From Takakia lepidozioides (Eukaryota; Plantae; Bryophyta): 64,000 nucleotides of DNA. Position numbers and translations under genes: made by a program. Positions 23,312-59,725 of the stretch are shown here, in pieces. The notes below the pieces were generated by a model. The model saw only the letters and a list, made by a program, of their open reading frames with translations, was not told the DNA's origin and made no database searches. Position 1 is the first letter of the stretch, and every line of letters begins with the position of its first letter. The stretch lies in the NCBI GenBank assembly GCA_030704615.1, contig CM060733.1:50530001-50594000 (forward strand), in the 5' to 3' direction.

Positions 23312-25252
23312 TCACCAATAGTCCCCACAGGAACAAAATCCATCTTGGAAATGGTGAAAACGGTTGGCGTCACGGACAACAACTGTCCGGCCAACAATCT
23401 TTGAGATGAACTTGGTGGCGGCGTGGCAGTCACCACACACGCGAAGGTTCTTGATGACACGGATAGCCGTCCCAGGGGGCGTGCTGATAAGCCCAAACGC
23501 AATGGCTAGCCTCTCACTGTGGTAGCAAAGAGAAAGCTTCTTCTGTTCCTCCTCCAAATCACTCAATACAAAGCGTGTGTCAGGCACATATCCGGCCTCT
23601 TCCATCAGGCCAAATAATCTGTTCAGTTCAGCATGGATTTCCTTGATTTGTGGATGTATATTATCTTCTACCACAAATGCATGCACTGAATTGTTGACCT
23701 CAATGCAGCTCCGCCCTGGTTCCTTCTTGACTCCTCTCTCCTCCATCATCTTTCTTACCTTTGCTTTATCGTCCCACCTACCTGCTGCACCATAGATGTT
23801 TGATAGCAGCACGTAAGCTGCAGGGTGCTGGGGATCCCATTTCACAATCAATTTTGCAGCACGTTCTGCTACGTCTACATTCCCATAAATTCTGCAAGCA
23901 CCCAGCAAGGCCCTCCAAACCTCAGTATCTGGTTTGATTGGCATTTTATTAATCAAGTCCTCTGCCTCATCCAATCTCCCTGCACGGCCTAGAAGATCCA
24001 CCATGCAGCCAAAATGTTCCACTGTAGGTGTAAGGCTGTGATCACGAGTCATGGAAGCGAAGTGGTGGAGGCCTTCATCAACAAGGCCCACATGGCTGCA
24101 TGCAGAGAGAACAGAAACAAAGGTGATTTTGTCTGGCTTCAAGCCTTTATGTTGCATCTGTTTGAAAAGTTGGAGGGCCTCCCTACCACCTCCATGCTGA
24201 GCATATCCTGCAATCATGGCACTCCATGAAATTACATCTCGTTTGACCATTTTGTCAAACACTAGACGTGCATCCATCACACTCCCACATTTGGCATACG
24301 TGTCAACAAGGGTACTCTCCAAATTCATATACGACATAATTCCTGCTTTGATTATGTCAGCATGGACCTGCTTGCTCCTTTCCAGGGCTCCTAGACTGCC
24401 ACATGCATTTAGAATGCCAATGAATGTAACTCTATCAGGCATCACCGACTCCTGTTGCATTTGCTTGTGGATTTCTAGAGCTTCCTCTGCATGCCCATGC
24501 TGGACATAGCCAGCGATCATCGCATTCCATGAGACAACATCTCGTTTAGTCATGTTGTCAAATACTTGTCGTGCATCCTTTACATTGCCGCATTTCCCAT
24601 ACATGTGGACAAGGGAAGTTCCAATAATAACATCTGACTCAATTACAGTTTCAAGGATGTCAGCATGGATACGCTTGCCCATTTCCAATGCTCTTAAGCT
24701 AGCACATGCATTGAGGATGGTGATGTATGTGACCCTGTCGGGCATCACCCCTTCCTGATGCATTTGCTCGTAGATTTTGAAAGCCTCCTCAGCCTGTCCA
24801 TGCTTTGCATATCCTGCCACCATACTAGTCCAAGTGAATATGTCTCGTTGAGGCATTTCCTCAAACACTTTTTGTGCATCCACCATGCTCCCGCATTTGG
24901 CATACATATTGACAAGGCTGTTAAACACAAAACTATTTGGCTTAAATTCACTCCGAATAATCTGCGCATGCACCTGTTTTCCGACTGCTAGTGCTTTTGT
25001 TTTGATGCACTCCTGCAAGAGATAGACATAAGTGATGGAGTCCACCCAAACACCTCTATGGTCCAACATGTGTACAGCCTCTTTCATTCTCCCCTCCTTA
25101 CATAGAGTCCGCACATCCCCAAGAGTGCAACACATAATCTTGTCGATTCCCTCTGTTGGCCCTCTTTCAAAACTGGTGGTCATGTTGGAGGTGCCACCCA
25201 GGCCACCAGTTTGATGTCCAACAAACAATTGACACTGAGTCAACCCTGCCAT
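23312..25252 (-). CDS. PLS-class pentatricopeptide repeat protein, DYW type (organellar C-to-U editing factor)
   Basis: Intronless 646-aa ORF with P/L/S repeats, E motifs, PG box (PGRSCIEV), HSERLA, CGDCH and terminal CSCGDYW. Confidence 0.95.
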
Positions 25253-37484: not shown

Positions 37485-37765
37485 TGTGGCACCTTCAGAG
37501 CAGCCGCCAGGAACTAACGAACAGTCGGTGACACGAACTGAATGAACCCCAACCCAATTGCAGATCAAGGTAGAGAACCTGTCGAGCAGATGGCTGAGGA
37601 AAGATCCACTGGAAAGAGTCTGGGTTTAGTCTGGCGCTGGGTTTTACGGTTTCACGAAGATGTTTGACGAAGATACTTTTTCCTCGTCCAAAACAGAACG
37701 TTTGTTGACTGAGAAGACCTGCTTCAGCTTGGCTCGTGTCCCAGGCAGTGGACCTTGCTCTCAAC

Positions 37766-40135
37766 ATGTACAGAGGTTTGCCTCTCCACACAGAACCTTC
37801 AGTGCCCAAAATCCAGTTCCCCGGATACGCATTTGTATCTTGCAGGGTAGTGGTGTTTCAATTCTGGAATCGGATCTGTTTATTTATCGGCCATAAGAGT
37901 TGGGGCAAGCCTAGGAGCTGTGGTGCAGCCATCATCACCACTGTTAGTGATGGAGGACGAATCCAGAGAGTAGTGGTGAAGCGATGGATCAATGACACTT
38001 TTGCAGCAGCTAGTGGTGACACTGTAATAGTGAGCAAGGAGGGACGACTGGATGAGGCCGTGCGCATTTTGGATCTTGCAAAACAACGAGGCGTTCAGGC
38101 ATATACTGAGGTTTGTGCTCGTCTCTTGCAAGAGTGTGGTTGGACGAAATCCCTGGCAGTTGGCAAGGGGGTTCATGGTCATATCATAAAAGATGGGTTC
38201 GAACCAGACACATTCCTCGGAAATGTCCTTGTCAGCATGTATTGCAAGTGCGAGAGTGTTGTGGATGCGCGCCTGGTGTTCAACAGCATGCGTAAACGGG
38301 ATGTGATCTCGTGGACTGCGATGATATCCGGATTAGCACAGCATGGGCAAGGAGAAGAGGCATTTGAGCTCTTTTGGCGAATGAAACAAGAAGGCGTGAA
38401 GCCCAACAAGGTCACCTTCATGAGCATCCTGGGCGCTTGCACCAGCCCTGAAGACTTGGAACAGGGGAAGCAGCTCCATGCGGGAGTCATTAACGCTGGA
38501 TATCAATCGGATGTGCGAGTCGGGACTTCCCTTGTCACCATGTATTGCAAGTGTGGGAGTGTCGCGGATGCCCTCCAGGTATTTGACAAACTCCCTCATA
38601 GAGATGCGGTGTCATGGACTGCAATGATAGCAGGATCTGCTCAGAATGTTCATGGTGAAAAGGCTTTCGAACTCTTCCGACAAATGCAAAGGGAAGGGTT
38701 GAGGCCGGACAAGGTGACATTCATTAGCGTTCTCAATGCATGTGCCAGCCCTGCAGCGCTGGAGCAGGGCAAGCAGCTCCAATTGGACATCGTCAGAGCT
38801 GGGTTTGGTTCAGATGTCCAAGTGGGAAATGCCCTTGTCAGCATGTATTGCAAATGCCAGAGTTTGGTGGATGCGAGGCAAGTGTTTGAGGAAATGCCCA
38901 GCAGAGATGTAATTTCCTGGAATGCTATGATGGGAGGATGTGCCCGACAGGGTCATGGGGAGGAGGCATTGGCACTGCTTCATCAAATGCAAAGAGAGGG
39001 CTTGAAAGGAGACAGGGTCACTTTCATGAATGTCCTCAAGGCCTGTGCCAGCCTCGCAGTCCTGGAGCAGGGCAAGTGGGTTCATGCCCACATCATCAAA
39101 GCTGGAGTCGAATCAGAGAGCCTAGTTGGGAATACTCTTATTGACATGTATACAAAATGCGGGAGTGTTGAGGATGCCCGGCAAGTATTTGACAGAATGG
39201 TCAAAAGAGATGTAGTCTCGTGGAATGCCATGATGATAGGATATTCTAAGCATGGCCATGGTAAGGAGGCCCTCCAACTCTTTAAACAAATGCAATTGGA
39301 AGGGGTGAAGCCAGATGACATCACATTTATGGCCGTTCTTTCTGCTTGCAGCCATGTAGGCCTAGTGAACGAGGGCTTTCAGTACTTCTATTCCATGAAC
39401 CAGGATCATGGTGTTGTACCAACACTGAAGCATTATGGCCTCATTGTTGACCTTCTTGGCCGGGCAGGGCGCTTGGTGGAGGCAGAGGATGTCATTAACA
39501 AAATGCCATTTGAACCCGATGTTCCAATTTGGGGGACCTTGCTTGGTGCCTGCAGAATCTATGGCAATGTGGAGATAGCAGAACGGGCCGCACAATGTGT
39601 TCTCAAGGTGGAACCAGAACATGCTGGAGTGTTGATGCAGCTTTCAAACATCTATGCTGCGGCTGGTAGATGGGATGATGTATCAAAGGTGAGAAAAATA
39701 GTGGAGGCCAAAGGCGTAAGAAAGGAGCCAGGTTGCAGCTGGATTGAGGTCAAGAATAGGGTCCATACATTCACTGTAGAAGATAGGTCACACCCACAAA
39801 CAGAGGAAATCCATGCCGAATTGGCAAGATTGACAAAGCAAATGAGAAACTTGGGATATGTGCCCGACACACGGTTTGTCTTGCATGATGTGGATCAGCA
39901 GAGCAAGGAAAAGGCCCTATGCCACCACAGTGAAAAACTGGCCATTGCTTTCGGACTCATCAGCACACCCCCTGGGACACTCATCCGCATAATCAAGAAC
40001 CTTCGTATATGTGGTGATTGCCACACTGCTGCCAAATTTATCTCGAAGATTGCTGAGCGTGAAATTATTGCAAGGGATGCCACCCGTTTTCATCACTTCA
40101 ATGAGGGTGTGTGTTCATGTGGGGATTATTGGTGA
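37766..40135 (+). CDS. PLS-class PPR protein, DYW type (start codon uncertain)
   Basis: Long intronless ORF with PLS triplets, PGCSWIEV, HSEKLA, CGDCH and CSCGDYW*. First in-frame ATG is at 37766; the gene is divergent from NSA2. Confidence 0.93.
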   Translation: MYRGLPLHTEPSVPKIQFPGYAFVSCRVVVFQFWNRICLFIGHKSWGKPRSCGAAIITTVSDGGRIQRVVVKRWINDTFAAASGDTVIVSKEGRLDEAVRILDLAKQRGVQAYTEVCARLLQECGWTKSLAVGKGVHGHIIKDGFEPDTFLGNVLVSMYCKCESVVDARLVFNSMRKRDVISWTAMISGLAQHGQGEEAFELFWRMKQEGVKPNKVTFMSILGACTSPEDLEQGKQLHAGVINAGYQSDVRVGTSLVTMYCKCGSVADALQVFDKLPHRDAVSWTAMIAGSAQNVHGEKAFELFRQMQREGLRPDKVTFISVLNACASPAALEQGKQLQLDIVRAGFGSDVQVGNALVSMYCKCQSLVDARQVFEEMPSRDVISWNAMMGGCARQGHGEEALALLHQMQREGLKGDRVTFMNVLKACASLAVLEQGKWVHAHIIKAGVESESLVGNTLIDMYTKCGSVEDARQVFDRMVKRDVVSWNAMMIGYSKHGHGKEALQLFKQMQLEGVKPDDITFMAVLSACSHVGLVNEGFQYFYSMNQDHGVVPTLKHYGLIVDLLGRAGRLVEAEDVINKMPFEPDVPIWGTLLGACRIYGNVEIAERAAQCVLKVEPEHAGVLMQLSNIYAAAGRWDDVSKVRKIVEAKGVRKEPGCSWIEVKNRVHTFTVEDRSHPQTEEIHAELARLTKQMRNLGYVPDTRFVLHDVDQQSKEKALCHHSEKLAIAFGLISTPPGTLIRIIKNLRICGDCHTAAKFISKIAEREIIARDATRFHHFNEGVCSCGDYW

Positions 40136-41570: not shown

Positions 41571-41879
41571 AGGAAGCAGCAGCAGCACTGGCGCACTTGA
41601 TAAAACCAGGTACCCTCATCTTCAATACAGTTCAGCCTGTTCTGTCCTCTTTTCAGAGTAGTCCCTATTTTCCAGCGAAGGGGAGGATGTATATGCATTA
41701 TGGGTTTTGTGGTAGGGATAGCTAAAGGGGCAGGGATGGATTGTGGGTGTAGAATCATTGAATCATTGAGCAAGACCAGTTTTGGAGAGAATGTAGTGTA
41801 CCAACTATGAAAGCAGTGTAATATGCGAGGGTGGCAGTGCATCAAAGACACCCAGGGCTCTGCGTTCTGCAGTTGAACC

Positions 41880-42590
41880 AGGCATTGTTTTATGAGTCAG
41901 GCACCTCCACCGCAACCAGTGCTTTTCAAAGAGGACCAAGAGAGGCAGTCAACAAGAACTTTTCTCGCACTGTTGCAGATGTGAGGACACTATGTAAGGG
42001 GGGACAACTGAAAGAGGCCCTGCAAATGTTGAACCAGGGAGGTCATTTGGCAGACTCTTTTACTTCTGTCTGTCTTATCCAGGAGTGTATCAAGATAAAA
42101 GGGTTAGCAGAGGGAAAGCAGGTACATGCGCACATTATCCAAAGTGGGTTTAAGCCAAACATCTTTGTCCTCAACTCCGTTGTCAACATGTATGCCGAGT
42201 GCGGAAGTGTGGTAGATGCCCGTCTGGTGTTTGACAAAATGCTTGAACGAGATATTTTTACATGGACACAATGATGGCAGGATATGCCAGGCATGGATGT
42301 GGTAGGGAGGCCTTGAAGATTTATGAGCAAATGGGGAGATACCCAACAATGTCACATACACTTGCGTTGTCAATGCATGTGCGAGCCTGGCAAACCTCGA
42401 AAAGGGCAAAGAGGTTCATGCTGACATTATCAAGGCTGGAATTAAGCTAGATATCATTCTTGAGACTGACATTGCTGACATGTATACCAAATGTGGGAGC
42501 ATGAAGGAAGCACGGCAAGTGTTTGACAATATGGCTCAACGAAATATGGTCTCATGGAACGTGATGATTGCAGGATATTCCAGCATGGCT
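41880..42590 (+). pseudogene. Truncated, frameshifted PPR pseudogene paralogous to the 23312-25252 gene
   Basis: FQRGPRE..DVRTLCKGGQLKEA..LIQECIKIK..GKQVHAHIIQSGFKPN matches [30 protein letters not shown]. Frameshifts near 42270 and 42335; no E/DYW domain. Confidence 0.85.
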
Positions 42591-44825
42591 GTGCTGGCCG
42601 CAAGCTGTCTTGAGTTATACTAGTCGCCCGAAGTCTCATTGCCATAAGGCTCGCATGGATCAAGTGATTCTCCCTCTCTCTCCCCATCTCTCTCACTGTC
42701 ACAAAGAGTAGGTTGCCCTGGATGGAATGTGCATAGAGCTTAAAGTTAAACTTCCTTTCCTTTCTTACCTGATTGTACATCTCAACCCAGCTGGAAAACA
42801 GAACCTGATGCATGCCCAATCTGTAGGCATGATCGTGAGGAAGCAAGTATTGCCCAATGCAATGCGGTTGCTTGTCTTCTGCACCTTGACAGCTTCACAA
42901 TGACTGCCGCAGAAGCAAAGCTTGTTGTACTCCAAGCTCCCCTGCTTCTTCCCTGTGATATCCAAAGCCCTATCTATTATGTAGTGAGCACATTTCACCA
43001 ACTTCAAACAACCCTCCTTCACTCAAACCCTTGACTGGAGAGCTTGCCACGACTACGGGTGCAAGGAATTTGCAATGACCAATTTGGTGGAACACTTTTG
43101 AGGCACAAACAAGCATGGACAAAGGAAGGTTGAAATAACCAGTGTTGGGGGGGTATTACTTTTTTGAATACCAGCCGGGTCCTGGTACTGAAACGACTGA
43201 ATATTGCATGAAGTTCCTAGAGGGGGCAGGTCGGAGACTGCGGGCTATCCATTGTGGCAACGACATCGTGTGTTCCTTGCGTTGCAGCTTAGAGCTCAGC
43301 CAACATTACTCAAATGTGTGTGCGACTGAAATCCTGGAGCAAACCATAGCGTAGGCCCCCGCCAATTTTGTAGGTCAAGAAAGGATGACATACAAGGAGG
43401 AAAATGAGAAATCCAAGCCACCTTGGACTCAGAGAGGGAGGGTAGGCACTAGGCACTGTCCCTCCCTGATTGTTGTTACATGAACAGAATTGGATGCAAA
43501 GTAAAAAGTTATGACAAAAACATCATCACCATGTCCAATAGTCGTCCTCATGTGTTGCACTCTCTAACCCCTTCTGCAACGGCCGGTGCTGCACTCCCCA
43601 TGAGACCATGCACCAATGATTATTAAAGGGATTGCAGAAGAAAAACACCGATTGATGTGATTAGTTCCCGAAGAACGTTGAATCCATCCTCGGAGGATTC
43701 GTTTGAGGCTTCGGGGATTTTGTTTGAAGGTAGGAAGGCCGCGTGAGCAGGTGAGCAGTGAGATGCCTCTAAATGCCTAATGAGCATATGAGCTTATGAG
43801 CATTTCACTAATAAGCAACATTCGGGGGCCAGATTGTTGAGATCTCACAAAACTTATCAAACAATTGTTGAAATCTAGTAGGCCAGCATGATATACTCAG
43901 GAAAGTGGCAGATGGATTCAATCTTGAGCTTTCATGGGACTATGACCACACACAGAACTATCCGGCTCGGTATTAACCTCCCAGTAACTGTGCACATTGC
44001 TCCATTATCATTTCAACCTCAGCGGACAGTGTTAACATTCCCACTGATCCGAGTATCTCTCATCGCATTCAACGACAACCATCTTACAATTTCATCAACT
44101 TCAACACCCTTACTGAGACTCAGACCATCAGACATGCTTCTTCCTTTTTGTCGTCAACAAGTCGCCTCAACCTGCTGGCATGACCCCTTTCATCCCTGTT
44201 TGGGAGTTGTTAACGTGTGTAATATACCCAGCAGCTATCCCTTCTCCCCCTCCTTTCCTCCCCTCAGTCATCTTTGCTTGACTGTCATGGACTCAACTGA
44301 TAAAACCTGCTTCATCCTCCTTGCCACATTAGGGTTCAACAAGACATTATGGACAGTTCCTCTGCTTTGAAGCTCTTCACAGTAGCATGTTTCTCAGCCT
44401 TACCCCCAGGAATGAGGTTAGCCTTATGCTCTTGACCACGGATTCCTTCACCCCCCTTCAAATTCATAAATAACCATCCCCCGGCCCTGCACAAGAGACT
44501 TGCCCGTTCACATCCACTTTCCGTGAACTGGATCAGGCAAAAGATCTGCAACTATCATTCCTGATGAGAACCTTGCCATCCGCTGATCCACCAGATTGCA
44601 CCAATGTTAGCACATTATTTGAACTTAAGCAGAGGAGTACCGTTTGATGTTTCAAGTGTCGTGACTTGACCATCAGCCATCTTGTTCACCCTCAGCAACT
44701 GATCCATGGCCTAATGCCAGAACTTCCATTGCAGTACAAGTTGCTGACAAGCGTGCTCTGTTGCAAATTGTTGGGGCAAATTGGCATTACTGTCAATCCT
44801 CTTCCGGCACTGCAGAATGGTGCCC

Positions 44826-47800
44826 TCAAGACGTATTTGATACCCAGTCTTCCCGATGGGTCCTCCAAACCTGGAGAAGATCTCGAGTTACAGCATATGC
44901 ATGACCTAGAAGAGGGCCTACCAGATCTGCAGCCAGAAAATCAGATCATTGACTTAAGGACCTTTCTTACCAAAGCATAGCACTGTGTGAACTGTAAACT
45001 AACTCTCTCGTTGAAAGGTCTGATATTCCATACAAGTGGAACCAAGACTCTACACCATTGCAGAGCCAAACAAAATGCCTGTTTTCATCAGAAGGTACAT
45101 TGTACAAACCTGAAGTGCCAGGCGCATCAGGCCTCTGGAAGTTCTTCCAGAGATTTGCTACTGTTCTAGCACGTTGACCAAGAGCCATAACACAATCCCC
45201 TCTCTCAGCAAGCTTCTGTTCCCAACCCGTGTCCCTGGTCTGCACTTCACTACTTGACTGGCCACTTTCTGATGTGTGAGCAGGAATTGGCGTGGTGTTG
45301 TGCCTTCCATTTATAGCTTGTGGCTCACCCCGTGAAGGGTCCACATCACCACAACCATCCTGTTTTCTTGAAGCAGCACTGAATTCCCGTTCCTTTAGGC
45401 GCCAGTGGAGAGCCTCCCTCATCAATGACCCAATGTGGAAAGTCGAAGTTTGAAAATGGATTGCAGACGAGGAAGAGCACTTGTTCTCTCCTGCTTTCAA
45501 ATCCAGGGAGATGACGACTCTTTCACCATCCAAAGTTGCCAATTTCAGCCGACTGCCAGCCTGTTTATCAAAAGAGGTAGAGATTGGGTAAAATTGTTCC
45601 CTTTGGTTTGCCTGCTACTCTTAAACTTTCTTGGAGGACCAACTCTGACCAGGGTCAAGATCAATGCATCAGCCATCCATACTCTGCAACCAAGCAACTA
45701 CCGCCAGACGTTTTTGTCTCTTTACAGGAGAGAGTCAGCGGGCTATACAGTCTGCAGCAAACACAAAACATATTGCTTCTGTACCATACCCAAATCGGTC
45801 CAACAAGTGTTGATACAACCAGTCCGTAGACACAGAGACAAGGTGCTTTGGGCATTTTTGTTCACTAAATTCTTTAACAGTACTGCAAGCCGCCAATGTC
45901 ACAGAAATAACAAGAAATCACTTAGAAAGAGTACACACCTTCAACAACCGTCCATGCAAAAGGTCTTCCAGAGGAGCATTCTGCCACATCATTGTGTCAT
46001 CCCCAGTCTTCCCTCTACATGTCTGATCATTCCCAGCAGTTAATGCAAAAGTCCATGAGAACGGACCTAGCAACTGTCTATCACCCACATCCAACATAAC
46101 CCCGCTGGAGCCTGCATCTGCTGTTGCACAGTACCAATGAGGAAACTGTCAAAAGAGTTTCAATCCTATGTCAACCTCTATGAAGAAGAAAATTCTTAAA
46201 TTAGAACAGTACCGCTTGTGAGAAATAACATATTGTTTAAAGTGAAATTCTCCTGAAAGGTGAGTGATGAGAGACAAAGACAAGACAATATCCAAGGCAA
46301 AACTAGAACCCCTTTGTGATATTGTCTCCCTCTCTGTTGGGCCAATGACTGTTATCACCTATTCAGTAAGTTATATAAAATGCACAGGCGTCAGGTACCT
46401 TATCAAGCCACACTCCACTGACAACCTCTTACCTGTGTTTGATGTATGAGCACTGTGAGACATTACTGCTGATCCAGTTGACTCACTGTTACGCAGCATC
46501 CACAAAGTTTGCTCCAGCCTTGGAGGTGGGTCCCTGAGCAGTGACAACACATCTATCCGCTTCCGCAACAGAAGGACACATGCTGCACCTGGGATGCTTA
46601 CACACTGCATTGTTGAGTCTAAACCATCAAGCAGCCCATCTGGGAGTCCAGAATTCACTGTTTTGTCCGACCCATATTTGTCCACATCTGCCCAACCTTT
46701 GCTTTCAAGTAGGAGATTATGGTAGTCATGGATATGAGAGAGAAAGACGGTGGCAATGACAGGACCCCATCGGCCACCAGGAAGCCTCACATTGAAATTG
46801 TAAGTCCATTGGGCACCAACTGGCAAGCCCAGTCCACCATTGATTGCAAAAGAGAAATGAGCAACAGGAACATTGATAGAGAGACAGCTCTGCAGCTCGA
46901 TGACGAGAGACCAGTATTGAGAGAGGGGGGTCCAACTGTGGTTGACTAGACAAACTCCTAGTTGGACCATATAGTCAGGGCACCATTTTCCTGTCAGGGC
47001 TTTTGCTGCTTTATCTGCTAGATGGACTGTTGGACCACCAAAAGAAAGCTGGTCGGGAGATACAGCGGTAGCAGGAAGTGGACATGCACTGAGCTGACAC
47101 CGGAGTCCAGTCTTGGATTCAGAGTCTGAGAGATCTGGTACTCTTTTGCCATTCCCATCTGGGAAGTTACTGGTCGGGTGTAGGTACCACCGTGTCGAGT
47201 CAGTGGCAATACCATATGCCATTGGTAAGGTGACTGCCAGTTCGTTCAACGAGAAAGTGAGAGCCTTGTCATGGCTTTGGACATCTTCCATACATGCTTC
47301 CACCTCAGACACCAATGAGAGCAGTGCCTACAAAGAAACCCCACCACACCACCAAGTTACCATGAAGCAGAGAACTTGTCCGTGACTGAGGTACTCTTGT
47401 ATATAACCAGCTTAGGCACTAGGTTTGGGTCTCTAACGGAAGTGCTCAACAGGGATACTGGTGGGTCCACAGCCAGCCCAAATTCCTGACATTGCATCAC
47501 ACTCATATCTTCGTATGAGAGGACCTCACAATGTCTCATTGTCCACATGTCTGTACTTGACTATTCCTAATGGAAGGAATAAAAAAGGTGGAGCACTCCT
47601 CTTCCTTTAGCATCACAGCAAGACACTCCACAGGATAGCTGCATGGGTCTGGAAAGTCAAGATTTGATGTTGGTTAGTGTTCAATGATTGCTAGGTGGTG
47701 GGATGCAATCATGGATACCTTTTGATTTTGGTATTCCACATTTTCTTGCTTTTGTTCCATAATCAGCTTATCACAAGGGCTGCCCTGCCACCTGCAATCA

Positions 47801-50800
47801 ACTCTCTTCTCCACAGCGCCTGGCAGAGACACCCTGGTTCTCAAAATTTCCGCCAACCCACAGCTTTCATTTTTTGCTGGCACGGTGACCTGCTCAGAGA
47901 CTTTCACTCCCAGGAGGCTTCCCCCAACAGTTAAAACCACCAATGGTCGGCTGCTTGTGTAAGCCATGGATAACCCAATTCCAGCTATTCCAACCACATT
48001 GGCAATTGGCACCCTTTGAGATATAAATTGCTCCCTAGGTTGCTGTATTGATTTCTGAGATTTAGAGGAGCCACCGGGGACTGTCAGCTTTTTGGTCTCA
48101 TAGCTGTTCCATGCCACACTAACACCCACTGTTGATGAAAAAGGCTCAACCCCACAGAAGCCATGCCATTGCCCAAGTGTTGCATTGCTTGTTGAAAAAG
48201 GCTGCATCTCCTCAAATAGATCAGCAATGAACACGTCAGATCCCACAGTGTAGCAAAGGTGATTTGGACCCAGCATGCAAGCACTACCAACCGGTGCTTT
48301 GATAGCCCTTTCACTGAACACCAACTTTCTGCCTTGGGAATTGCTTGCAGGCAAATTCATGCCCTCTAACTGGGAACATCCTTGTTTCAAATGAAACAGC
48401 CAGAAGGGTCCACGTAGAGAACCCCCCTCTAATCTATCCTCTTTCATAGTGGAGATCACTATCACACGCCCAAACTGGCCTATCACTACCAACCAGTTAG
48501 CACCCCTATTTTTCTCAGCCTCTGTTGACCTGAGAGAGGTTATGCCTGCAGCTTGGTGGTGGCTCTGACTACAAGTTGAAACAGGGAACAGAGCCACCAC
48601 TGGCTGCTGAAGGTCACAGACTACTCTTGGAGAAGAACTTGCAAAGCTGCCCTGTTCCACAGGCAGGAAATATACCCTTCCATCCAGATCCCCTGCAAGT
48701 ATTTCATGAATCGTCTATGTAAGTACAGAGTAACAACTCCATACAGACAACTTAAAAGGCAACCCAAACAATTATTACATGAGTCCAAGTTAAGACCTAC
48801 AATAGTGAAACTTAGAGGGTGAGTGCAGTCTTATTGTGTTGTTAATCGAAAAGGTTGGACCGAGTTGCAGCCTCTTTTCTGGAAGTAATGAGGAAAAGTC
48901 AGCCATGATGTCGGCTAGCACTGCGCAGCAAAGCCATTTGATAAATTTTTAAATTTAATTTTGAGAGTCGTACAACATGAGGAGGCTGTGCCACAATCTT
49001 TCCATCAGTTGACTACTGTTGAATATATGTACAGCTCAGCCCATGAAACATGCTGCTGAGCATGGCTAATGTATGTCTGAGCAGTATTAACCAAAGAAAC
49101 AACCAGAGAGAAGAACCTTACTGGAAAGAGAGAAGGAACAGAGGAAAGAAGATGGGGAGGGAGATTGGATACCTTGCAGTAATATACCATGCTCATGTGC
49201 ATGGGAGAGCTCAATAGAAAGAGCCTCAAACAGCTCTTTTGACAGAAAAGCCTGGCCTCTTTCACATCCATTCCCCTGCCCCTGATGCATGGCATATGCC
49301 AATAGCAGGCAGGTGGGCTCCCTCCTGAACATTGGTCCATAATCACAGGGAGCTCCTTGCAGACTTTCAGTGGAACTCCATGGGACCCCACTGGTACTCA
49401 AAAACTTGGGGGGCCCAAACCGTGCTAAGATCACCACCTAATGACAAATCACATAGGCATGTTTCAATCTGAAGTTGAATACATTGCAAAACTTGGAGGG
49501 AGTTTCGACACTTGATAGAGTATGTAAATAGGGAATAGATTAGCGAGGAGCTATCCAAGAGAGACATTTTGGCAGACAGACAAACGGTCTAGTTGTGCAA
49601 TGAGTCTCTTCCGTGGGCTGATCCATGTGCATATCATGATGATGAGAAGTGAACCACCACGTTCTGTTGTGAGTCCTTGAAAATGCAGACAATTCACTAT
49701 CTTTTCCATCAAGTCAATGCTGGGTTCAAGGGCTTTCATGAGGAGAGGTCTCACAGTGAAGTCCCACTAGTAGAGAGAGCATTACTTGTAGTGGCCCTCA
49801 TTCTGCTCTCCTCCTGCTCTATTTCCTAGTGTGAACACACTTGGCATGGGCTCTAGGGCAGAAATACAGTCTCAGGAAGATACACAGACACCACATTGGC
49901 ACAACCCTCTGGTCAGTTGACAAATTGAGAACACCTACAAAGTTTTGAGGACCAAACGCACCAACAGTCGCACCAGGGACCACACCCAGTAGTGCGCCTG
50001 ACGTCACAGCATCTTTCACTTCCATCAACACTGGCTCTGGTTTGTGATTCTGCACCACCAACCTTTTCCACTGTGGTAGGAAACCAAGCACACTTTCGCT
50101 GCCTACAACAAGGCTTGTAGCATTGACTGTAGCACCACCACCTATGATTTCTGGCAAGGCCCTTTCGTCTGCCGGCTTCATGTTTTCTCCTCTGGCCTCC
50201 AAAACATCCTCCCCTGCATCCTTATGGAATTGAGACGGACCTCTAAGACTGCACGCTGATGTTGATAGGACCCTCATGCCACATTTATTTATCTCCAGTG
50301 GTTCTTGCGCTTGTGTGAGCCTGACATGATTAGCTCCCTTCTGTTTCTTGATGGGCCTGCACATATAACAAGCCAGAGGGCAGAAATATTCATTCCCATT
50401 CCGCCTCTTCCTCCTATTTTCCCCTCTTCTCCATTCAAACCTCTAGGTGAGATGGCCAAAGATGCAGTGATTTTGCAAAGAAAACGCTGACATGTAGCGT
50501 TGAGGGCTTATGATTTCACATACCTGACTGATAAGATGCTGTCTTCCATCCTGAGTGCCCAAATGCATCCTTCCTCGGTGATCACTAGCAGACAAGCAGC
50601 CTGGTGCGCCACTTGAACGCTGCTTTCCGATGTTGATTCGGTTTTGCCATCTCTTATGGGAGTGCCAGGCGCGGGAGGGCCGAACAGTAGAAACACAGGG
50701 TCTGCTGGAAATCGCCACTTCGACTGCAAGAGAAAAACTGATCAGGCTGAGATATGGGCGTCCGTTCGAAACAGTAATGTGTCTTGAATATCGAGTGGTG

Positions 50801-51322
50801 CCCAAGAGAAGCACCAAGGTGACGAACCATTTGTGATATCCAGCTTCAACTCGACGCTCACAAGATAGAGGCCCAAACACCAAGTGACCAGTTTCTCTCG
50901 ATTGACTCACAACACTCACAGCAACTATGAACAACTTCGAATGTTACTAGGGGAAAACTGTACTTGCATTCACAACCAAAACCTTCTCATGACACACGGA
51001 CAACGAGCTCCAGACAAACCTCTCCTTTGCCACTTTGCCCAAGAACACATGGCTAGATGAAAAATCACGATTCTCACAGCTTCAGCTTCCCCTCACAATT
51101 CGAGCAGGAAACAAAATTGGAACAGCACAGCAGCGTTAGAACAGATAGGAGGAGCGGGGAAAGGCTGACCAAGAGCTGCTTGTCCTGGAAGATGTGCACA
51201 AGACATGGAGCTGCACGGCACGCTACCCAAAGCAGGGGTGTAGCTCCAATGGCTGCCCCCGTCAAGACGGGTCGACCCACCACCCTCAATCGACCCCACT
51301 CCAAGTTCCCTTCCCCCTCCAT
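44826..51322 (-). CDS. FAAP100: FAAP100-like protein (Fanconi anaemia core complex-associated protein 100), about 1222 aa, 9 exons
   Basis: Phase-consistent GT-AG exons: 51170-51322, 50524-50723, 49906-50356, 49173-49437, 47719-48692, 46433-47327, 45939-46117, 45110-45560, 44826-44926. Ordered motifs parallel vertebrate FAAP100 as recalled; see the finding for details. Confidence 0.72.
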
Positions 51323-53121: not shown

Positions 53122-53565
53122 TTATCCCTCAGCCAAAGGCTTCAATCTCGTCAGTCGTCTAATCCGATCCTTATCTGTATGCTCCAGCGATCCCTGAGAC
53201 ACAATCTCATCAAGACAAAGGCAAACCCTTCCATACTTCTCCAGGAAGAGGCGCTCACTGGGAGCCTTCTTGCACACATCCTTGACCGAGGATGTGACCG
53301 CGTTGAGCACCTCCATCAACGCAAGCTCATCGTACACCTCCTTCCCCACCGCAAACACACATATATCTCCTATCACCGTGTAAACAACAAACACAGACTT
53401 GTGAGAAGCCACGAATACCTCGTCGTCCCGTGCACTCTTGAGATTCTCCGTTGCCAGCTTCACCAAAAACGACCGCCAGTGCAACCTCTCCTCTGCTGGC
53501 AGACCATGAAATCTCTCCAACAACACATTCCCTCCCCGATTTGCAAACAGCACGCACAGAATCAT
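53122..53565 (-). CDS. LOLITA: TSET/TPLATE complex small longin subunit (LOLITA/TSPOON, sigma-adaptin-like)
   Basis: 147-aa intronless ORF MILCVLFANRGGNVLLERFHG.PAEERLHWRSFLVKL..YDELAL..LFLEKYGRVCLCLDEIV..DRIRRLTRLKP. Confidence 0.88.
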   Translation of the reverse strand: MILCVLFANRGGNVLLERFHGLPAEERLHWRSFLVKLATENLKSARDDEVFVASHKSVFVVYTVIGDICVFAVGKEVYDELALMEVLNAVTSSVKDVCKKAPSERLFLEKYGRVCLCLDEIVSQGSLEHTDKDRIRRLTRLKPLAEG

Positions 53566-53828
53566 GGCTATGGCTGCCCCTCTTCTTCCCTCCCTGCAAA
53601 CCCCAACCCTAAACTGCAAACCCCAACCCCCTCCTCTCTCTCTCTCGCTCTCGCTCTCCCCCTCTCGCACGCGTAAGTCCCCAAAGGCAGCGATCGTCGG
53701 GACCAACGTTCCCAATTCCGGCGAACGACGGACGCAAACGGACGAAAACACAAAAGACGTTTTCTGCCCGGAAGTGCACGTCGACGGGCAGTATTGGCTG
53801 CCCGCAGCCCTATGGCCAGGAAACTGGT

Positions 53829-53865
53829 GATAACCGGTATTCAATGACCGGTCAATACCGGTATC
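53829..53865. promoter_or_regulatory. Triple ACCGGT palindrome in the divergent LOLITA/YIP4 promoter
   Basis: GATAACCGGTATT-CAA-TGACCGGTCA-ATACCGGTATC, with ACCGGT at 53833, 53847 and 53857. Function is inferred only from position. Confidence 0.4.
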
Positions 53866-54450
53866 CCCCCCGAACACCCTTTGTTATCCTCGTTGCTGGA
53901 GAAGCTCAACGCTCGATCGTCTTGTTGCTGGACTCGATTCCTTCGTGTGATGTCTCGTGGTGTTGTTGGTGTGGAGAGGGATTGATTGTCGGTGTGAGGT
54001 TGTCTGAATTTGCAGTGAGAGTTGGTGTGAGGGTGGTTGTGTAAGAGAGTAAGTAGCCGGGGAGTTTTGGATTTGGGAGATCTCGACATTGTGGAGGTTC
54101 TTAAGGTGTGCTGCAATGGTGTATGAAGGAGCATGGAATCATCGCTGGAGAAGTGGTGCTTGAGAGGAGGGGAAGCAGATGTGGACGTGCTTGTTGATCT
54201 TATTAGCACGTTTGTTGCGAGGGATTCATCGTTTTTGTGTGAAAGCTTGACTGGGAATCCGGAAACCCTATGCTGGATCGGTTGTCTCATGTTTGGATCT
54301 ACATTCCGTCTGGTTCGAGCTTGATCAGGCTTGCACGGAAGTTTTGAAGAGATCTGTGGAAGGTAAAGAGATTGGGTGAGTGGCTGTGAGGAGTGATAGA
54401 GGTGCATGCAGCCAGGGTCTAGGAACGCACTGTACGGCATACGGCAGGAC

Positions 54451-55251
54451 ATGTCTCGGGAGGATCTGGTTCCACTGTACTCGTCGTCTCAGTCTGACAT
54501 TGATGAGATCGAGAGCTTGTTCAATCTGAGTGTTCAACCTGCAAAGCTAGAGGTCCCACCGTCGGTTCCGGCAGCGCGGAAGCCTTCAAGTCCCCCGCAT
54601 AAATACTCTATACCAGTTTCATCTGTCCCCCAACCTGCTGCGACTGGATTTAGCAACCATGCCTCGTCGTCAGCAGGGCCCGCCATTGCGGCCGAGTTTG
54701 GCGGGGGGGCTACATATAGCACACTCAACGAGCCTGTCTGGGACACATTGAAAAGAGACATGCTGCGGGTGGTTAACAATGTGAAGAATGTGGTTTTCCC
54801 AAATCCCTTCCGCGAAGATCCAGGCAAAGCACTAAGGGACTGGGATCTCTGGGGCCCCTTCTTTTTCATCATCTTCTTGGCGCTCATACTTTCATATTCT
54901 GCCACATCAAATAGGTCGAAGGTGTTTGCTGTTGTTTTTGCAACGCTGTCAACTGGAGCTGTTGTCCTCACGCTCAACGTTCAGCTTCTGGGCGGCTCGA
55001 TTATCTTCTTCCAGAGCCTCAGTGTCTTGGGCTACTGTCTCTTCCCCCTTGATGTCGGAGCTATTGTGTGCCAGGCCAAAAACAACAAGCTCTTTCGCAG
55101 TCTCGTGGTCCTTATCTCCCTGGCTTGGAGTTCATGGGCCGCATACCCCTTCGTGAGCACATCAGTGCCCGCTAGCCGAAAAGCCCTTGCGGTCTATCCT
55201 GTTTTGCTTCTCTACATCTCAATTGGGTTTCTCGTACTAGCAAACGATTGA
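54451..55251 (+). CDS. YIP4: Yip1-domain Golgi protein (YIP4/YIPF6-like)
   Basis: [69 protein letters not shown], with several TM helices. An upstream in-frame ATG at 54406 is also possible. Confidence 0.92.
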
Positions 55252-56881: not shown

Positions 56882-59725
56882 CTATGTCAAATTCGCCCGC
56901 CGCAAGGTTTCGGCAACGAGTTCATTCCATGTATCAATTGGCCCTGGGTTGCACCAATGAAGGCAGTCAATTATCATAGGTCCTACAAAGCCCTTTGAGA
57001 AGGGATGGTACTGGCGATAAGGCCCTGGATGCCCATCCGCCCTCAGCTGTGCAAGATCGGTCATGTCAAGAATCTTGAGCCGGGTAGCATTGGCCGGGCT
57101 GACCTCTTTTAAAACTTTGCGAATTTCTTCGGATTCAATAACATGCATTACTCTATTCTGCTCAAGTATAGGCACACCACTTGGAACAGTGCGCGGACAT
57201 GACCCCCCTGTGTCCCATTTCCCCTTCTCAAAGTGGTCGGGTGCAAATGTTCGAAAAACAGTAAGCCCTTTGTATCCAGGCAGTGAAATGACCCCCTTCA
57301 GCACAGCGTGTACGACCTTCCTGTAAGAATCATTGAACCCCAATTCTGGCAGAGCCAACCCTGGGCAATAGTGACATCCCAGCACTTTGCCTTGCTCTAC
57401 GTAAACCCCTCTCTTGAAGTACCACTGCCCTGAGGACATTACTACCACATCTACACCTGCCATCGATGATGCCCACCGTTCATCCAAGACATCCAGGTCA
57501 AGATATGTGACAATTTGAGTGCTGTTGTTGACCAACATCGGCTTGTCAGTTTGCCTTACCAGATAGGGAGACCAGTAGCTCGAAAGTGTGAAAGAGTATG
57601 ATGGGAACAGCCAGTGAGTGAACTTGAAGTCGGCAGATCGAAAAGTGTTTATTGGCTTCTCCACCTAAAGTTCCCCAAAAGAACGAGGAGCTGATTAGCT
57701 TGAGGAAAAAACCTGCAAACAGTGTTATAAGCTTCTGAAAGATGACGTATACAGGAAGTCAGGCTCATTTATCTAATGTATTTTCTTGGCAACTGGTTTC
57801 CCAGAACACTGGCCCTCCAGGCCAAGAGCATAATAGACAGTACCTGGGCAAGAATACAAAGCAGTGATTGCCTCTGGTTCCCTGCAATGGAGTCCCCCAC
57901 AAAGGCCACAGTTTTTCCTCTCATTGACTCCAGGAAGGCTCTGCCATCAAGCCGAGGCAGCTCACAATCATTTGGCTTCCATTTCCAGTGCAAATACCCA
58001 CTGTCAGGACGTCCATTCTTCATGCAGTTTTGATCATCTCCAATATACTGGCACATTTCATTCGTGTACAGAGGGGGTTGGGGATCAGGCACCCAGGTCC
58101 CTATGGACAGGTCACATGCTCCTGAAATAGAATGTCAGCGTCAAGTATTTGGAGAGCATGTCGTATCTGAGCAGCAATGGCACACTTGGAAGGGATACCA
58201 CTGCATTGTCTATCCCCTTGACCATAGTCATTGGGCCACCATTCTCAGCACTTTCACCCCCACAGTACATTTCTCATTTCCACTTTCCCCAATTTTTCAG
58301 CTCCACACCACTGCATGAACAGATAAGCTCTAAGGAAATAAAAACCACAATTAAAAGAAGAGAGAATCACAGAGGATCTCACGGACTGTTGATGTGGATG
58401 GACAGGGAGGGTACTGCAGGTAACCTGTGCCAGCCAGAACAGTGACATTCGATCCCTTCGTCTCCAGAAATAAGCTTCCAGCTTCCTTGGTGATGTAAGT
58501 CTCCTTGGTTGTTAAACCTTGAGCTACATGATAGACACGCACATGAGTACTTACAAGCAATAGCTCTCCATCTCTTCTCTCTCCCTCCTGTCTCTGTCTC
58601 TCAGGCACTCTGCCAGCAATTTGGCCACCATCTTGGGCATCTTCCATAGATTTGGCACTCTCATACATTCCATGATGAAAGGGAACAAAACCTATGTTCA
58701 TGCCATTACGTAGTCGAACTTGAGAGATGGCACAAAGAATACGAGCTAAAATAAACAACCCTGATGAGAAACAGAAAAGAGGATAATCAGGGAGGTACTG
58801 ATAGTCTAACCTGTAACAGCGAAATTGGTGACATTGGACCCCTTCATCTTGGAAAACAAGCTGCCAGCTTCCTTGGTGTCGTCAGGTTCTGTGGTGCTTG
58901 GACCTTGAACTACACGACAGTCACACGCATGAGTGTGTACGTTGTCTGCTTTGTTAGATTCTTGTACATGTTCCGAAATTCCTTTCCTTTCTTTCTTTCT
59001 GCCTCCACTCTGCCAATCTGTCAAGCATGCTTTCATCCCATGCACCACAATCTGGGGGAAATGGCAAACGGATGATACAGATGTGAAGGAAGACCTGAAA
59101 ATGGAGGGTGGCTAGCATACTGGCAGAGAGGAGAGAGAGGAGCAAGATTGGGGGAAAATAGAGCAGGCACATGTAGCACTCATGCATGTGATGTCATGTA
59201 CTTCAAGGTTTAAGCATCCAGGAAACTGATGACATCAAGGAAGCTACCAGCTTGTCCCTGAAGACGAAGGGGTCCAATACCATCAACTCTGTGACCACAG
59301 GTTGGATTTTAGCCCCTTCCCTTTCCATATGAGTCTCTAGTCTGTGATCTCCTTACCACACAATTTTTCACGGCTTATTTATCTCGACTGTGCCATCTCT
59401 CTCAAGGGACCAAAATGAGATAATGTAAACCACCGTCACAGCCTAGAGGACAGGTCCAGTGCAATAGTCTCTAGCCTGCAACCGCCAAATCGGTGAGATT
59501 GGATACATTAGCATATGGAAACAAGCTGCCAGCTTCCTTCGTGTCATGACGGACAAATGGCCTCGTATGGAATACGAACGCACGGATCACTGCAACCGGA
59601 AGTACGGCAGCAAGCACACACGCGTAAACCAAGCTTTTAAGTCGGATTACACTTCGTGGCTCGAAAACGGGCTGGACCCGTTGTTGGGAAGAGAGGGTGC
59701 TGAAGTCTTGCGAATCGCCTGCCAT
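56882..59725 (-). CDS. Trichome birefringence-like (TBL/DUF231) polysaccharide O-acetyltransferase
   Basis: Exon 59476-59725 (TM helix), optional 99-nt exons 58811-58909 and 58425-58523, 57844-58121 (CDLSIGTWVPD..NCMKNGRPD..FVGDS), 56882-57664 (RADGHPG..DCLHWCNPGPIDTWN). Confidence 0.88.
59202..59300 (+). repeat. Inverted copy of the 99-nt TBL stem exon within intron 1
   Basis: Reads QGLSIQETDDIKEATSLSLKTKGSNTINSVTT, followed by G|GTTGG on the + strand; the acceptor reads TGTAC where the other copies have TGTAG. Confidence 0.88.

What the first reader, a model, noticed from the sequence alone, without database searches (positions are those of the whole stretch)
44826..51322. Full-length FAAP100-like gene in a land plant: possible animal-type Fanconi anaemia E3 ligase module (FANCB-FANCL-FAAP100)
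Seen: nine GT-AG exons join with correct phases into one ORF of about 1222 aa, which the ORF track shows only as fragments. Recalled from memory of human FAAP100, the motifs occur in the same order from N to C terminus: HIFQDKQLLSKWRFP ~ VYDQEGGLLTAAFRFP; ILLQGDLDGRV ~ VVLCGLPDGQL; DLQQPVVAL ~ HLEEPVIFI; WLVVIGQFGRVIVI ~ CLVAFGHHGRMLAI; APVGSAC..YTVGSDVFIADL ~ GPVLCAAC..HSTPSDLCVVDL; HDKALTFSLNE ~ RNKALTSLNE (coiled coil); LVNHSWTPLSQYWSLVIEL ~ LENSSSFSLDQGWTLCIQV; CVLLLRKRIDVLSLLR ~ CLPLSRHTVDMLQCLR; TRDLLQVWRTHR ~ AQRLLQVYRQLR. To my knowledge FAAP100 is not among the FA components described in Arabidopsis (FANCM, MHF, FANCD2, FANCI, FANCL, FANCC/E/F). Inference: this lineage retains the catalytic scaffold of the FA core complex, so FANCD2/FANCI monoubiquitination may operate here in crosslink repair or meiosis.
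Basis: partly seen in the sequence, partly recalled or inferred. Interest (0 to 1): 0.85.

Follow-up and report, generated by a model that had tools for sequence, protein, structure and literature searches.

The report
FAAP100 orthologue in non-flowering land plants
This moss gene encodes a diverged counterpart of FAAP100, a scaffold of the human Fanconi anaemia DNA-repair ligase. FAAP100 is reported absent from Arabidopsis, but this gene is intact in mosses, liverworts, a clubmoss, a fern, Ginkgo and conifers, so those plants may keep a more animal-like repair complex.

Summary
The minus strand holds an intact nine-exon gene of 1211 aa (not ~1222). Six of eight introns appear as joints in RNA-type contigs; the other two are shared with a spliced Sphagnum orthologue. 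Orthologues occur in Sphagnum, Marchantia, Riccia, Diphasiastrum, Ceratopteris, Ginkgo and conifers. None carries a functional name or a Pfam hit, and none came from a flowering plant (limited searches). Profiles of the plant family rank human FAAP100 first among all PDB sequences (best E 3e-4). A model of the window's exon 6 and a full-length fern model both match FAAP100 best (fern: Foldseek E 6e-22; BBSome 6e-10; FANCB 4e-8), with FAAP100's domain order. Most likely it is the non-catalytic scaffold of a FANCB-FANCL-FAAP100 ligase. That role is inferred: FANCB was not searched for and no interaction was tested. Papers searched report no FAAP100 or FANCB in Arabidopsis, and none reports a plant FAAP100. 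The scan had no earlier FAAP100 note (index covers this genome only); it holds an unchecked FANCA candidate elsewhere in the genome.

The parts
51170..51322 (-). Exon 1 (ATG at 51322; aa 1-51), start of the beta-propeller; most conserved exon among land plants
50524..50723 (-). Exon 2 (aa 52-118), propeller strands
49939..50356 (-). Exon 3 (aa 118-257): conserved basic patch RPxKKxK (candidate nuclear localisation signal, inferred), poorly conserved insert, then propeller strands
49173..49437 (-). Exon 4 (aa 258-346), propeller; end aligns to human FAAP100 ~239-262
47719..48692 (-). Exon 5 (aa 346-670), rest of the propeller and lead-in to the coiled coil; aligns to human FAAP100 ~262-355 and ~442-480
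46433..47327 (-). Exon 6 (aa 671-969): coiled-coil helix (about 47324-47202) and beta-sandwich (about 47108-46554); model superposes on FAAP100 residues 457-752
45939..46117 (-). Exon 7 (aa 969-1028), start of the alpha/beta domain (by alignment to the fern model)
45110..45560 (-). Exon 8 (aa 1029-1179), alpha/beta domain and C-terminal helices
44826..44926 (-). Exon 9 (aa 1179-1211), last helix and stop codon; an alternative acceptor at 44870 appears in one contig

Best explanation
The gene is the land-plant orthologue of FAAP100 and most likely acts as the non-catalytic scaffold of a FANCB-FANCL-FAAP100 ubiquitin ligase. Shown: an intact, spliced, conserved gene; FAAP100's domain order (propeller, long coiled coil, beta-sandwich, alpha/beta, terminal helices) in the family; FAAP100 ranks above FANCB and all other proteins by sequence profile, fold and language-model features. 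From the animal structures: FAAP100 and FANCB pair through an intermolecular coiled coil, their C-terminal halves form the central lobe, and their propellers sit with FANCL in the outer lobes; the RING of FANCL is the ligase. Inferred for the plant: it enters the nucleus through the basic patch, pairs with a FANCB orthologue, positions FANCL and its E2, and so promotes monoubiquitination of FANCD2-FANCI in crosslink repair or at stalled forks. Orthology about 0.9; the full ligase role about 0.7.
For: Plant-family profiles vs 177,635 PDB sequences: human FAAP100 is the top hit, E 3.3e-3, 3.3e-4, 0.037, with segments in the same order. Window exon 6 model (pLDDT 61): Foldseek top three are FAAP100 chains, E 4-7e-4; VIA-align top hit Z 11.2 over 175 residues, model 1-274 on chain 457-752; Atlas top three are FAAP100 clusters. 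Full-length Ceratopteris orthologue model (pLDDT 58): FAAP100 E 6e-22 and 1.5e-20, BBSome 6e-10, FANCB chains 4e-8 and 2e-6; Z 26.9 vs 21.4 for the next entry. Atlas features 0.96/0.95/0.94 to FAAP100 clusters, 0.92 to FANCB. All nine exons hit the same plant proteins in order. The coiled coil, which binds FANCB in animals, is among the segments still alignable to the human sequence.
Against: No Pfam FANCAA hit for any exon or orthologue. Identity to human is only 11-17%, and single exons find no FAAP100 hit in the PDB. Models are of modest confidence and whole-chain rmsd is large (35-40 A), which I attribute to domain hinging but did not test. For exon 6 alone the Z margin over generic beta-sandwiches is about 1. 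N- and C-terminal profiles do not hit FAAP100. FANCB and FANCL were not searched for in this genome, and no reciprocal search from human was run. The window's own joined protein was not folded.
Confidence: 0.7

Rival explanations
1. It is a true FAAP100 orthologue but works without FANCB, as a homodimer or with plant-specific partners. It might support FANCL or the FANCM/FANCC-E-F anti-crossover machinery rather than a canonical ligase.
For: No FANCB note exists for this genome, though that is weak. FANCB is reported absent from Arabidopsis. FAAP100 and FANCB share one architecture, so self-pairing is conceivable. The plant protein is about 200-330 aa longer than human FAAP100, with variable inserts.
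Against: The coiled coil that pairs with FANCB in animals is still alignable to the human sequence. An unchecked note reports a FANCA candidate in the same genome, which hints at a fuller core complex.
Confidence: 0.17
2. It is the FANCB orthologue, or a single gene descended from the common ancestor of FANCB and FAAP100.
For: Same domain order; FANCB chains are hit at E 4e-8 and 2e-6 and a FANCB cluster scores 0.92 in the Atlas.
Against: FAAP100 scores about 14 orders of magnitude better in Foldseek. FANCB never appears in the profile searches of the PDB. Atlas ranks 1-4 are FAAP100 clusters.
Confidence: 0.07
3. It is a BBSome-type (BBS2/7/9-like) trafficking scaffold with the same propeller, coil, sandwich and platform layout, linked to flagellated sperm.
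For: BBSome subunits are the next-best structural hits over the full length, E 6e-10 to 1e-8. Many carriers have flagellated sperm (own knowledge).
Against: 12 orders of magnitude weaker than FAAP100; BBS9/PTHB1 scores only 0.77 in Atlas features. The gene is intact in pine, spruce and Cryptomeria, and conifers lack flagella (own knowledge). No BBS Pfam hit. A basic, NLS-like patch is conserved.
Confidence: 0.04

Closest known systems
FAAP100 (human, PDB 7KZP chains P/Q; PDB 9A0J chain P), Pfam FANCAA PF15146
   Same: Domain order and fold along nearly the whole chain (fern model 18-904 on chain 9-821); colinear motifs in propeller, coiled coil and sandwich.
   Different: 11-17% identity; 1211 aa with long variable inserts; below detection by Pfam FANCAA; partners and function untested.
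FANCB (7KZP chains B/O; chain names from own knowledge)
   Same: Same five-part architecture; significant structural hit.
   Different: Much weaker than FAAP100 by every method; no sequence-profile hit.
BBSome subunits BBS1/2/7/9
   Same: Propeller, coil, sandwich, platform, helices layout; full-length structural hits.
   Different: Weaker scores; no BBS Pfam domains; gene kept in non-flagellated conifers.
Arabidopsis FANCC-FANCE-FANCF (PMC10085685)
   Same: Precedent: an FA core subunit hidden in plants by low identity (16%) and found by remote homology.
   Different: That module is in flowering plants and was tested genetically; this one was found only outside flowering plants and is untested.

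Membership tests
FAAP100 orthologues | Domain order: beta-propeller, long coiled coil, beta-sandwich, alpha/beta domain, C-terminal helices | tested here: met
   Secondary structure of fern orthologue model, structural alignment 18-904 on 9-821; window exon 6 gives coil plus sandwich
FAAP100 orthologues | FAAP100 is the best match among all solved proteins, ahead of FANCB and BBSome subunits | tested here: met
FAAP100 orthologues | Colinear sequence similarity to animal FAAP100 | tested here: met
   Weak but top-ranked in the central region, E 3e-4 to 0.04; not detected at the termini
FAAP100 orthologues | Reciprocal best hit from animal FAAP100, or one supported clade with it against FANCB | not tested
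FAAP100 orthologues | Forms a complex with FANCB and FANCL and is needed for FANCD2 monoubiquitination | not testable with these tools
   Needs pull-down, multimer modelling and knockout
FANCB-FANCL-FAAP100 module | FANCB, FANCL, UBE2T, FANCD2 and FANCI are encoded in the same genome | not tested
   No tool searches the rest of this genome by sequence; earlier notes name only a FANCA candidate
Pfam FANCAA PF15146 (as a curated sequence model; not filed under it) | Score above the gathering threshold | tested here: not met
   No hit for any exon or orthologue. Only 58-81% of members of the chordate-dominated FAAP100 Atlas clusters carry it
FANCB | Closer to FANCB than to FAAP100 | tested here: not met
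BBSome BBS2/7/9 | BBS Pfam domains or best structural match to BBS subunits | tested here: not met

The most novel reading that the evidence does not exclude
Non-flowering land plants keep a near-complete, animal-type Fanconi core ligase (FAAP100 with FANCB and FANCL, perhaps FANCA too, plus FANCC-E-F). The reduced pathway of Arabidopsis would then be a secondary loss in or within flowering plants, and Marchantia or Ceratopteris could be used to separate the ligase role from the anti-crossover role.
Probability: 0.5. Interest if true: 0.78.

Novelty: new member of a known kind. Interest (0 to 1): 0.64.

Why it matters
Singh et al. [quoted passage not shown] A FAAP100 in the genera Marchantia and Ceratopteris, which include transformable models (own knowledge), makes that question testable in plants. 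It also pushes the FAAP100 scaffold back to before the plant-animal split and names an unannotated family of 1000-1200 aa proteins. Surprise is tempered because the same paper already proposed an ancient FA complex. Novelty rests on an open-access library and on the names returned; a subscription paper or an automatic database label could have been missed.

Tried and rejected
Pfam on each exon and on orthologues: nothing relevant. Single-exon phmmer vs PDB: nothing relevant. Atlas features on exon 6 alone: only sub-threshold rows, 0.75-0.76. N- and C-terminal profiles vs PDB: no FAAP100 hit. P0007, P0010 and P0013 from the exon 6 search were rejected as repeat-driven false hits. Word-indexed homologue searches were insensitive: P0003 found only itself and alignment A2 found only gymnosperms, so they say nothing on absence in flowering plants. 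The metagenome scan with exon 1 alone found nothing; with the exon 1 alignment it gave only Sphagnum-type loci. No synteny with L001, L002, L006 or L009 outside the gene. The organism could not be named. Two wanted papers were not held (Stanley 2016, Wang 2021). Alternative exons considered from ORFs at 49766, 46358 and 45873 were rejected: they lie inside introns shown by joints.

Full report
1. Observation. The region 44826-51322 holds a nine-exon gene on the minus strand: 51322-51170, 50723-50524, 50356-49939, 49437-49173, 48692-47719, 47327-46433, 46117-45939, 45560-45110 and 44926-44826. Every intron is GT-AG (167-501 nt), phases match, and the junction codons are sense codons. The quoted plant motifs are all present in order.

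Splicing evidence. Two public runs hold the stretch; both are contigs and only guessed to be RNA. Laid on 44800-50790 (5991 letters, within the operators' limit), they show joints for introns 2, 3, 5, 6, 7 and 8. Intron 1 was outside the stretch, but one contig stops at 50724 with 280 further letters upstream, which fits splicing to exon 1 (inference). Intron 4 was not bridged. Both introns sit at the same position and phase in orthologous locus L001. They are also removed in L004, a spliced contig with one 1083-aa frame that maps in ten blocks onto genomic locus L006; its cluster contains Sphagnum jensenii proteins. Third codon positions diverge most. The gene is real and under constraint.

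Method note. The joined protein was not built for searching or folding; that step is left out. Full-length tests used natural orthologues returned by the tools. Human FAAP100 appears only as a PDB match.

2. Relatives. Exon 6 against 1.84 billion representatives gave 12 hits, nine of them real. With later searches the family covers Sphagnum, Marchantia paleacea, Riccia sorocarpa, Diphasiastrum complanatum, Ceratopteris richardii, Ginkgo, Picea, Pinus, Taxus and Cryptomeria, plus unnamed assemblies. Named members are 'hypothetical', 'unknown', 'uncharacterized' or bare locus tags. The window's exons hit these proteins in order from first to last residue. On exons 5 and 6 the window is closest to L001 and Sphagnum (exon 6 about 48-56% identity); earlier scan notes also call the genome a moss (unchecked). 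No flowering-plant or algal sequence was found, but sensitivity was limited: the fern orthologue scored only E 8e-5. Loss in flowering plants is therefore suggested, not shown. Physcomitrium and Ceratodon were not seen either, and 50% clustering may hide them.

3. Identity by sequence. Pfam gives nothing, including FANCAA. Profiles built from the plant family rank human FAAP100 (7kzp_P) first among 177,635 PDB sequences: E 3.3e-3 for the full alignment, 3.3e-4 for the propeller-to-coil part, 0.037 for a conifer-heavy alignment. The exon 6 profile lists it third at E 0.3. FANCB never appears. Profiles of the two ends do not reach FAAP100.

Identity by structure. The window's exon 6 folds into a 41-residue helix and a beta-sandwich (pLDDT 61). 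Its top three Foldseek hits are FAAP100 chains (E 4-7e-4). VIA-align ranks 7kzp_P first of 48,161 chains (Z 11.2, rmsd 6.9, 175 aligned, chain 457-752), about 1 above generic sandwiches that cover only ~100 residues. The Atlas top three rows are FAAP100 clusters, TM 0.44-0.47. The full-length Ceratopteris orthologue (pLDDT 58, pTM 0.44) shows strands to residue 490, a helix at 511-564, a sandwich at 583-758, an alpha/beta unit at 794-905 and terminal helices. This is the order described for FAAP100 and FANCB (10.1101/2020.05.01.072751). Foldseek gives FAAP100 6e-22, 1.5e-20 and 3e-14; BBSome subunits 6e-10 to 3e-8; FANCB 4e-8 and 2e-6 (chains Q = FAAP100 and B/O = FANCB from own knowledge, P named). 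VIA gives Z 26.9 against 21.4 for the next entry. Language-model features give 0.96, 0.95 and 0.94 to FAAP100 clusters, 0.92 to FANCB and 0.77 to BBS9. The methods agree. The structural ones share predicted models of modest confidence, so they are not fully independent.

4. Mechanism. In animals FANCB, FANCL and FAAP100 form the catalytic module, with FANCL's RING as the ligase that monoubiquitinates FANCD2-FANCI. FAAP100 and FANCB join through an intermolecular coiled coil, and their C-terminal domains build the central lobe. The plant protein keeps all these domains and no catalytic motif was seen, so it is most likely the same scaffold. A basic patch RPxKKxK at the exon 2/3 junction is kept from moss to conifer and may be a nuclear localisation signal (inference). 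Partnering with FANCB and FANCL, and action on FANCD2-FANCI, are inferred and untested. I put orthology at about 0.9 and the canonical ligase role at 0.7. Rivals: an orphan or homodimeric FAAP100 (0.17), FANCB or an unduplicated ancestor (0.07), a BBSome-like scaffold (0.04).

5. What is known. Girard et al. 2014 list FAAP100, FANCA, FANCB and FANCG as absent from Arabidopsis (PMC4132730). Singh et al. [quoted passage not shown] Searches pairing FAAP100 with plants, land plants, Physcomitrium/Physcomitrella or Foldseek found no report of a plant FAAP100. The library lacks most subscription papers. The scan holds no other FAAP100 note, but one unchecked FANCA candidate in this genome.

6. Verdict. 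This is a new member of a known family in a lineage where I found no report of it. It is conserved across non-flowering land plants and bears directly on a question that Arabidopsis cannot answer. Interest 0.64; 0.78 if FANCB is confirmed and flowering plants prove to have lost the scaffold.

Noticed in passing
window 47743-48068 and 46562-46752: In both runs, deeper contigs with many substitutions, 1-nt indels, a 90-nt skip without splice ends and unrelated flanks lie on parts of exons 5 and 6. They suggest partial, diverged copies of this gene elsewhere in the genome, perhaps captured fragments. No second copy is in this window.
   Followed up: no
window 44870-45110: One contig joins exon 8 to an alternative acceptor at 44870, which shifts frame and replaces the conserved last helix with 58 other residues. 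Eight letters fit both sides, so it may be an artefact.
   Followed up: partly
L006:10721-11114: The Sphagnum orthologue has one extra intron inside the region matching exon 6; the other eight introns match the window's.
   Followed up: partly
P0005 (Picea sitchensis ACN39910.1): This cDNA protein lacks about 75 residues of the propeller relative to other conifers, probably an exon-skipped or faulty clone.
   Followed up: no
window 23312-25252 (-), 37736-40135 (+), 41831-42274 (+): Two PPR-E-DYW RNA-editing factor ORFs and a further PPR fragment.
   Followed up: no
window 53122-53877 (-), 54406-55251 (+), 56882-57664 (-): Neighbours upstream: clathrin adaptor small-chain domain, Yip1 domain and PC-esterase ORFs. 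No synteny with orthologous loci was seen.
   Followed up: partly
Atlas result, rows 6 and 10: Unnamed arthropod (479 aa, score 0.93) and oomycete (1277 aa, score 0.92, 13% FANCB_N) clusters resemble the fern protein. They are leads for further hidden FAAP100/FANCB relatives.
   Followed up: no
PDB 6VBU/6XT9 rows: BBSome subunits BBS1/2/7/9 match the model over nearly its full length, hinting at a shared ancestry of the FANCB/FAAP100 scaffold and BBSome subunits.
   Followed up: no
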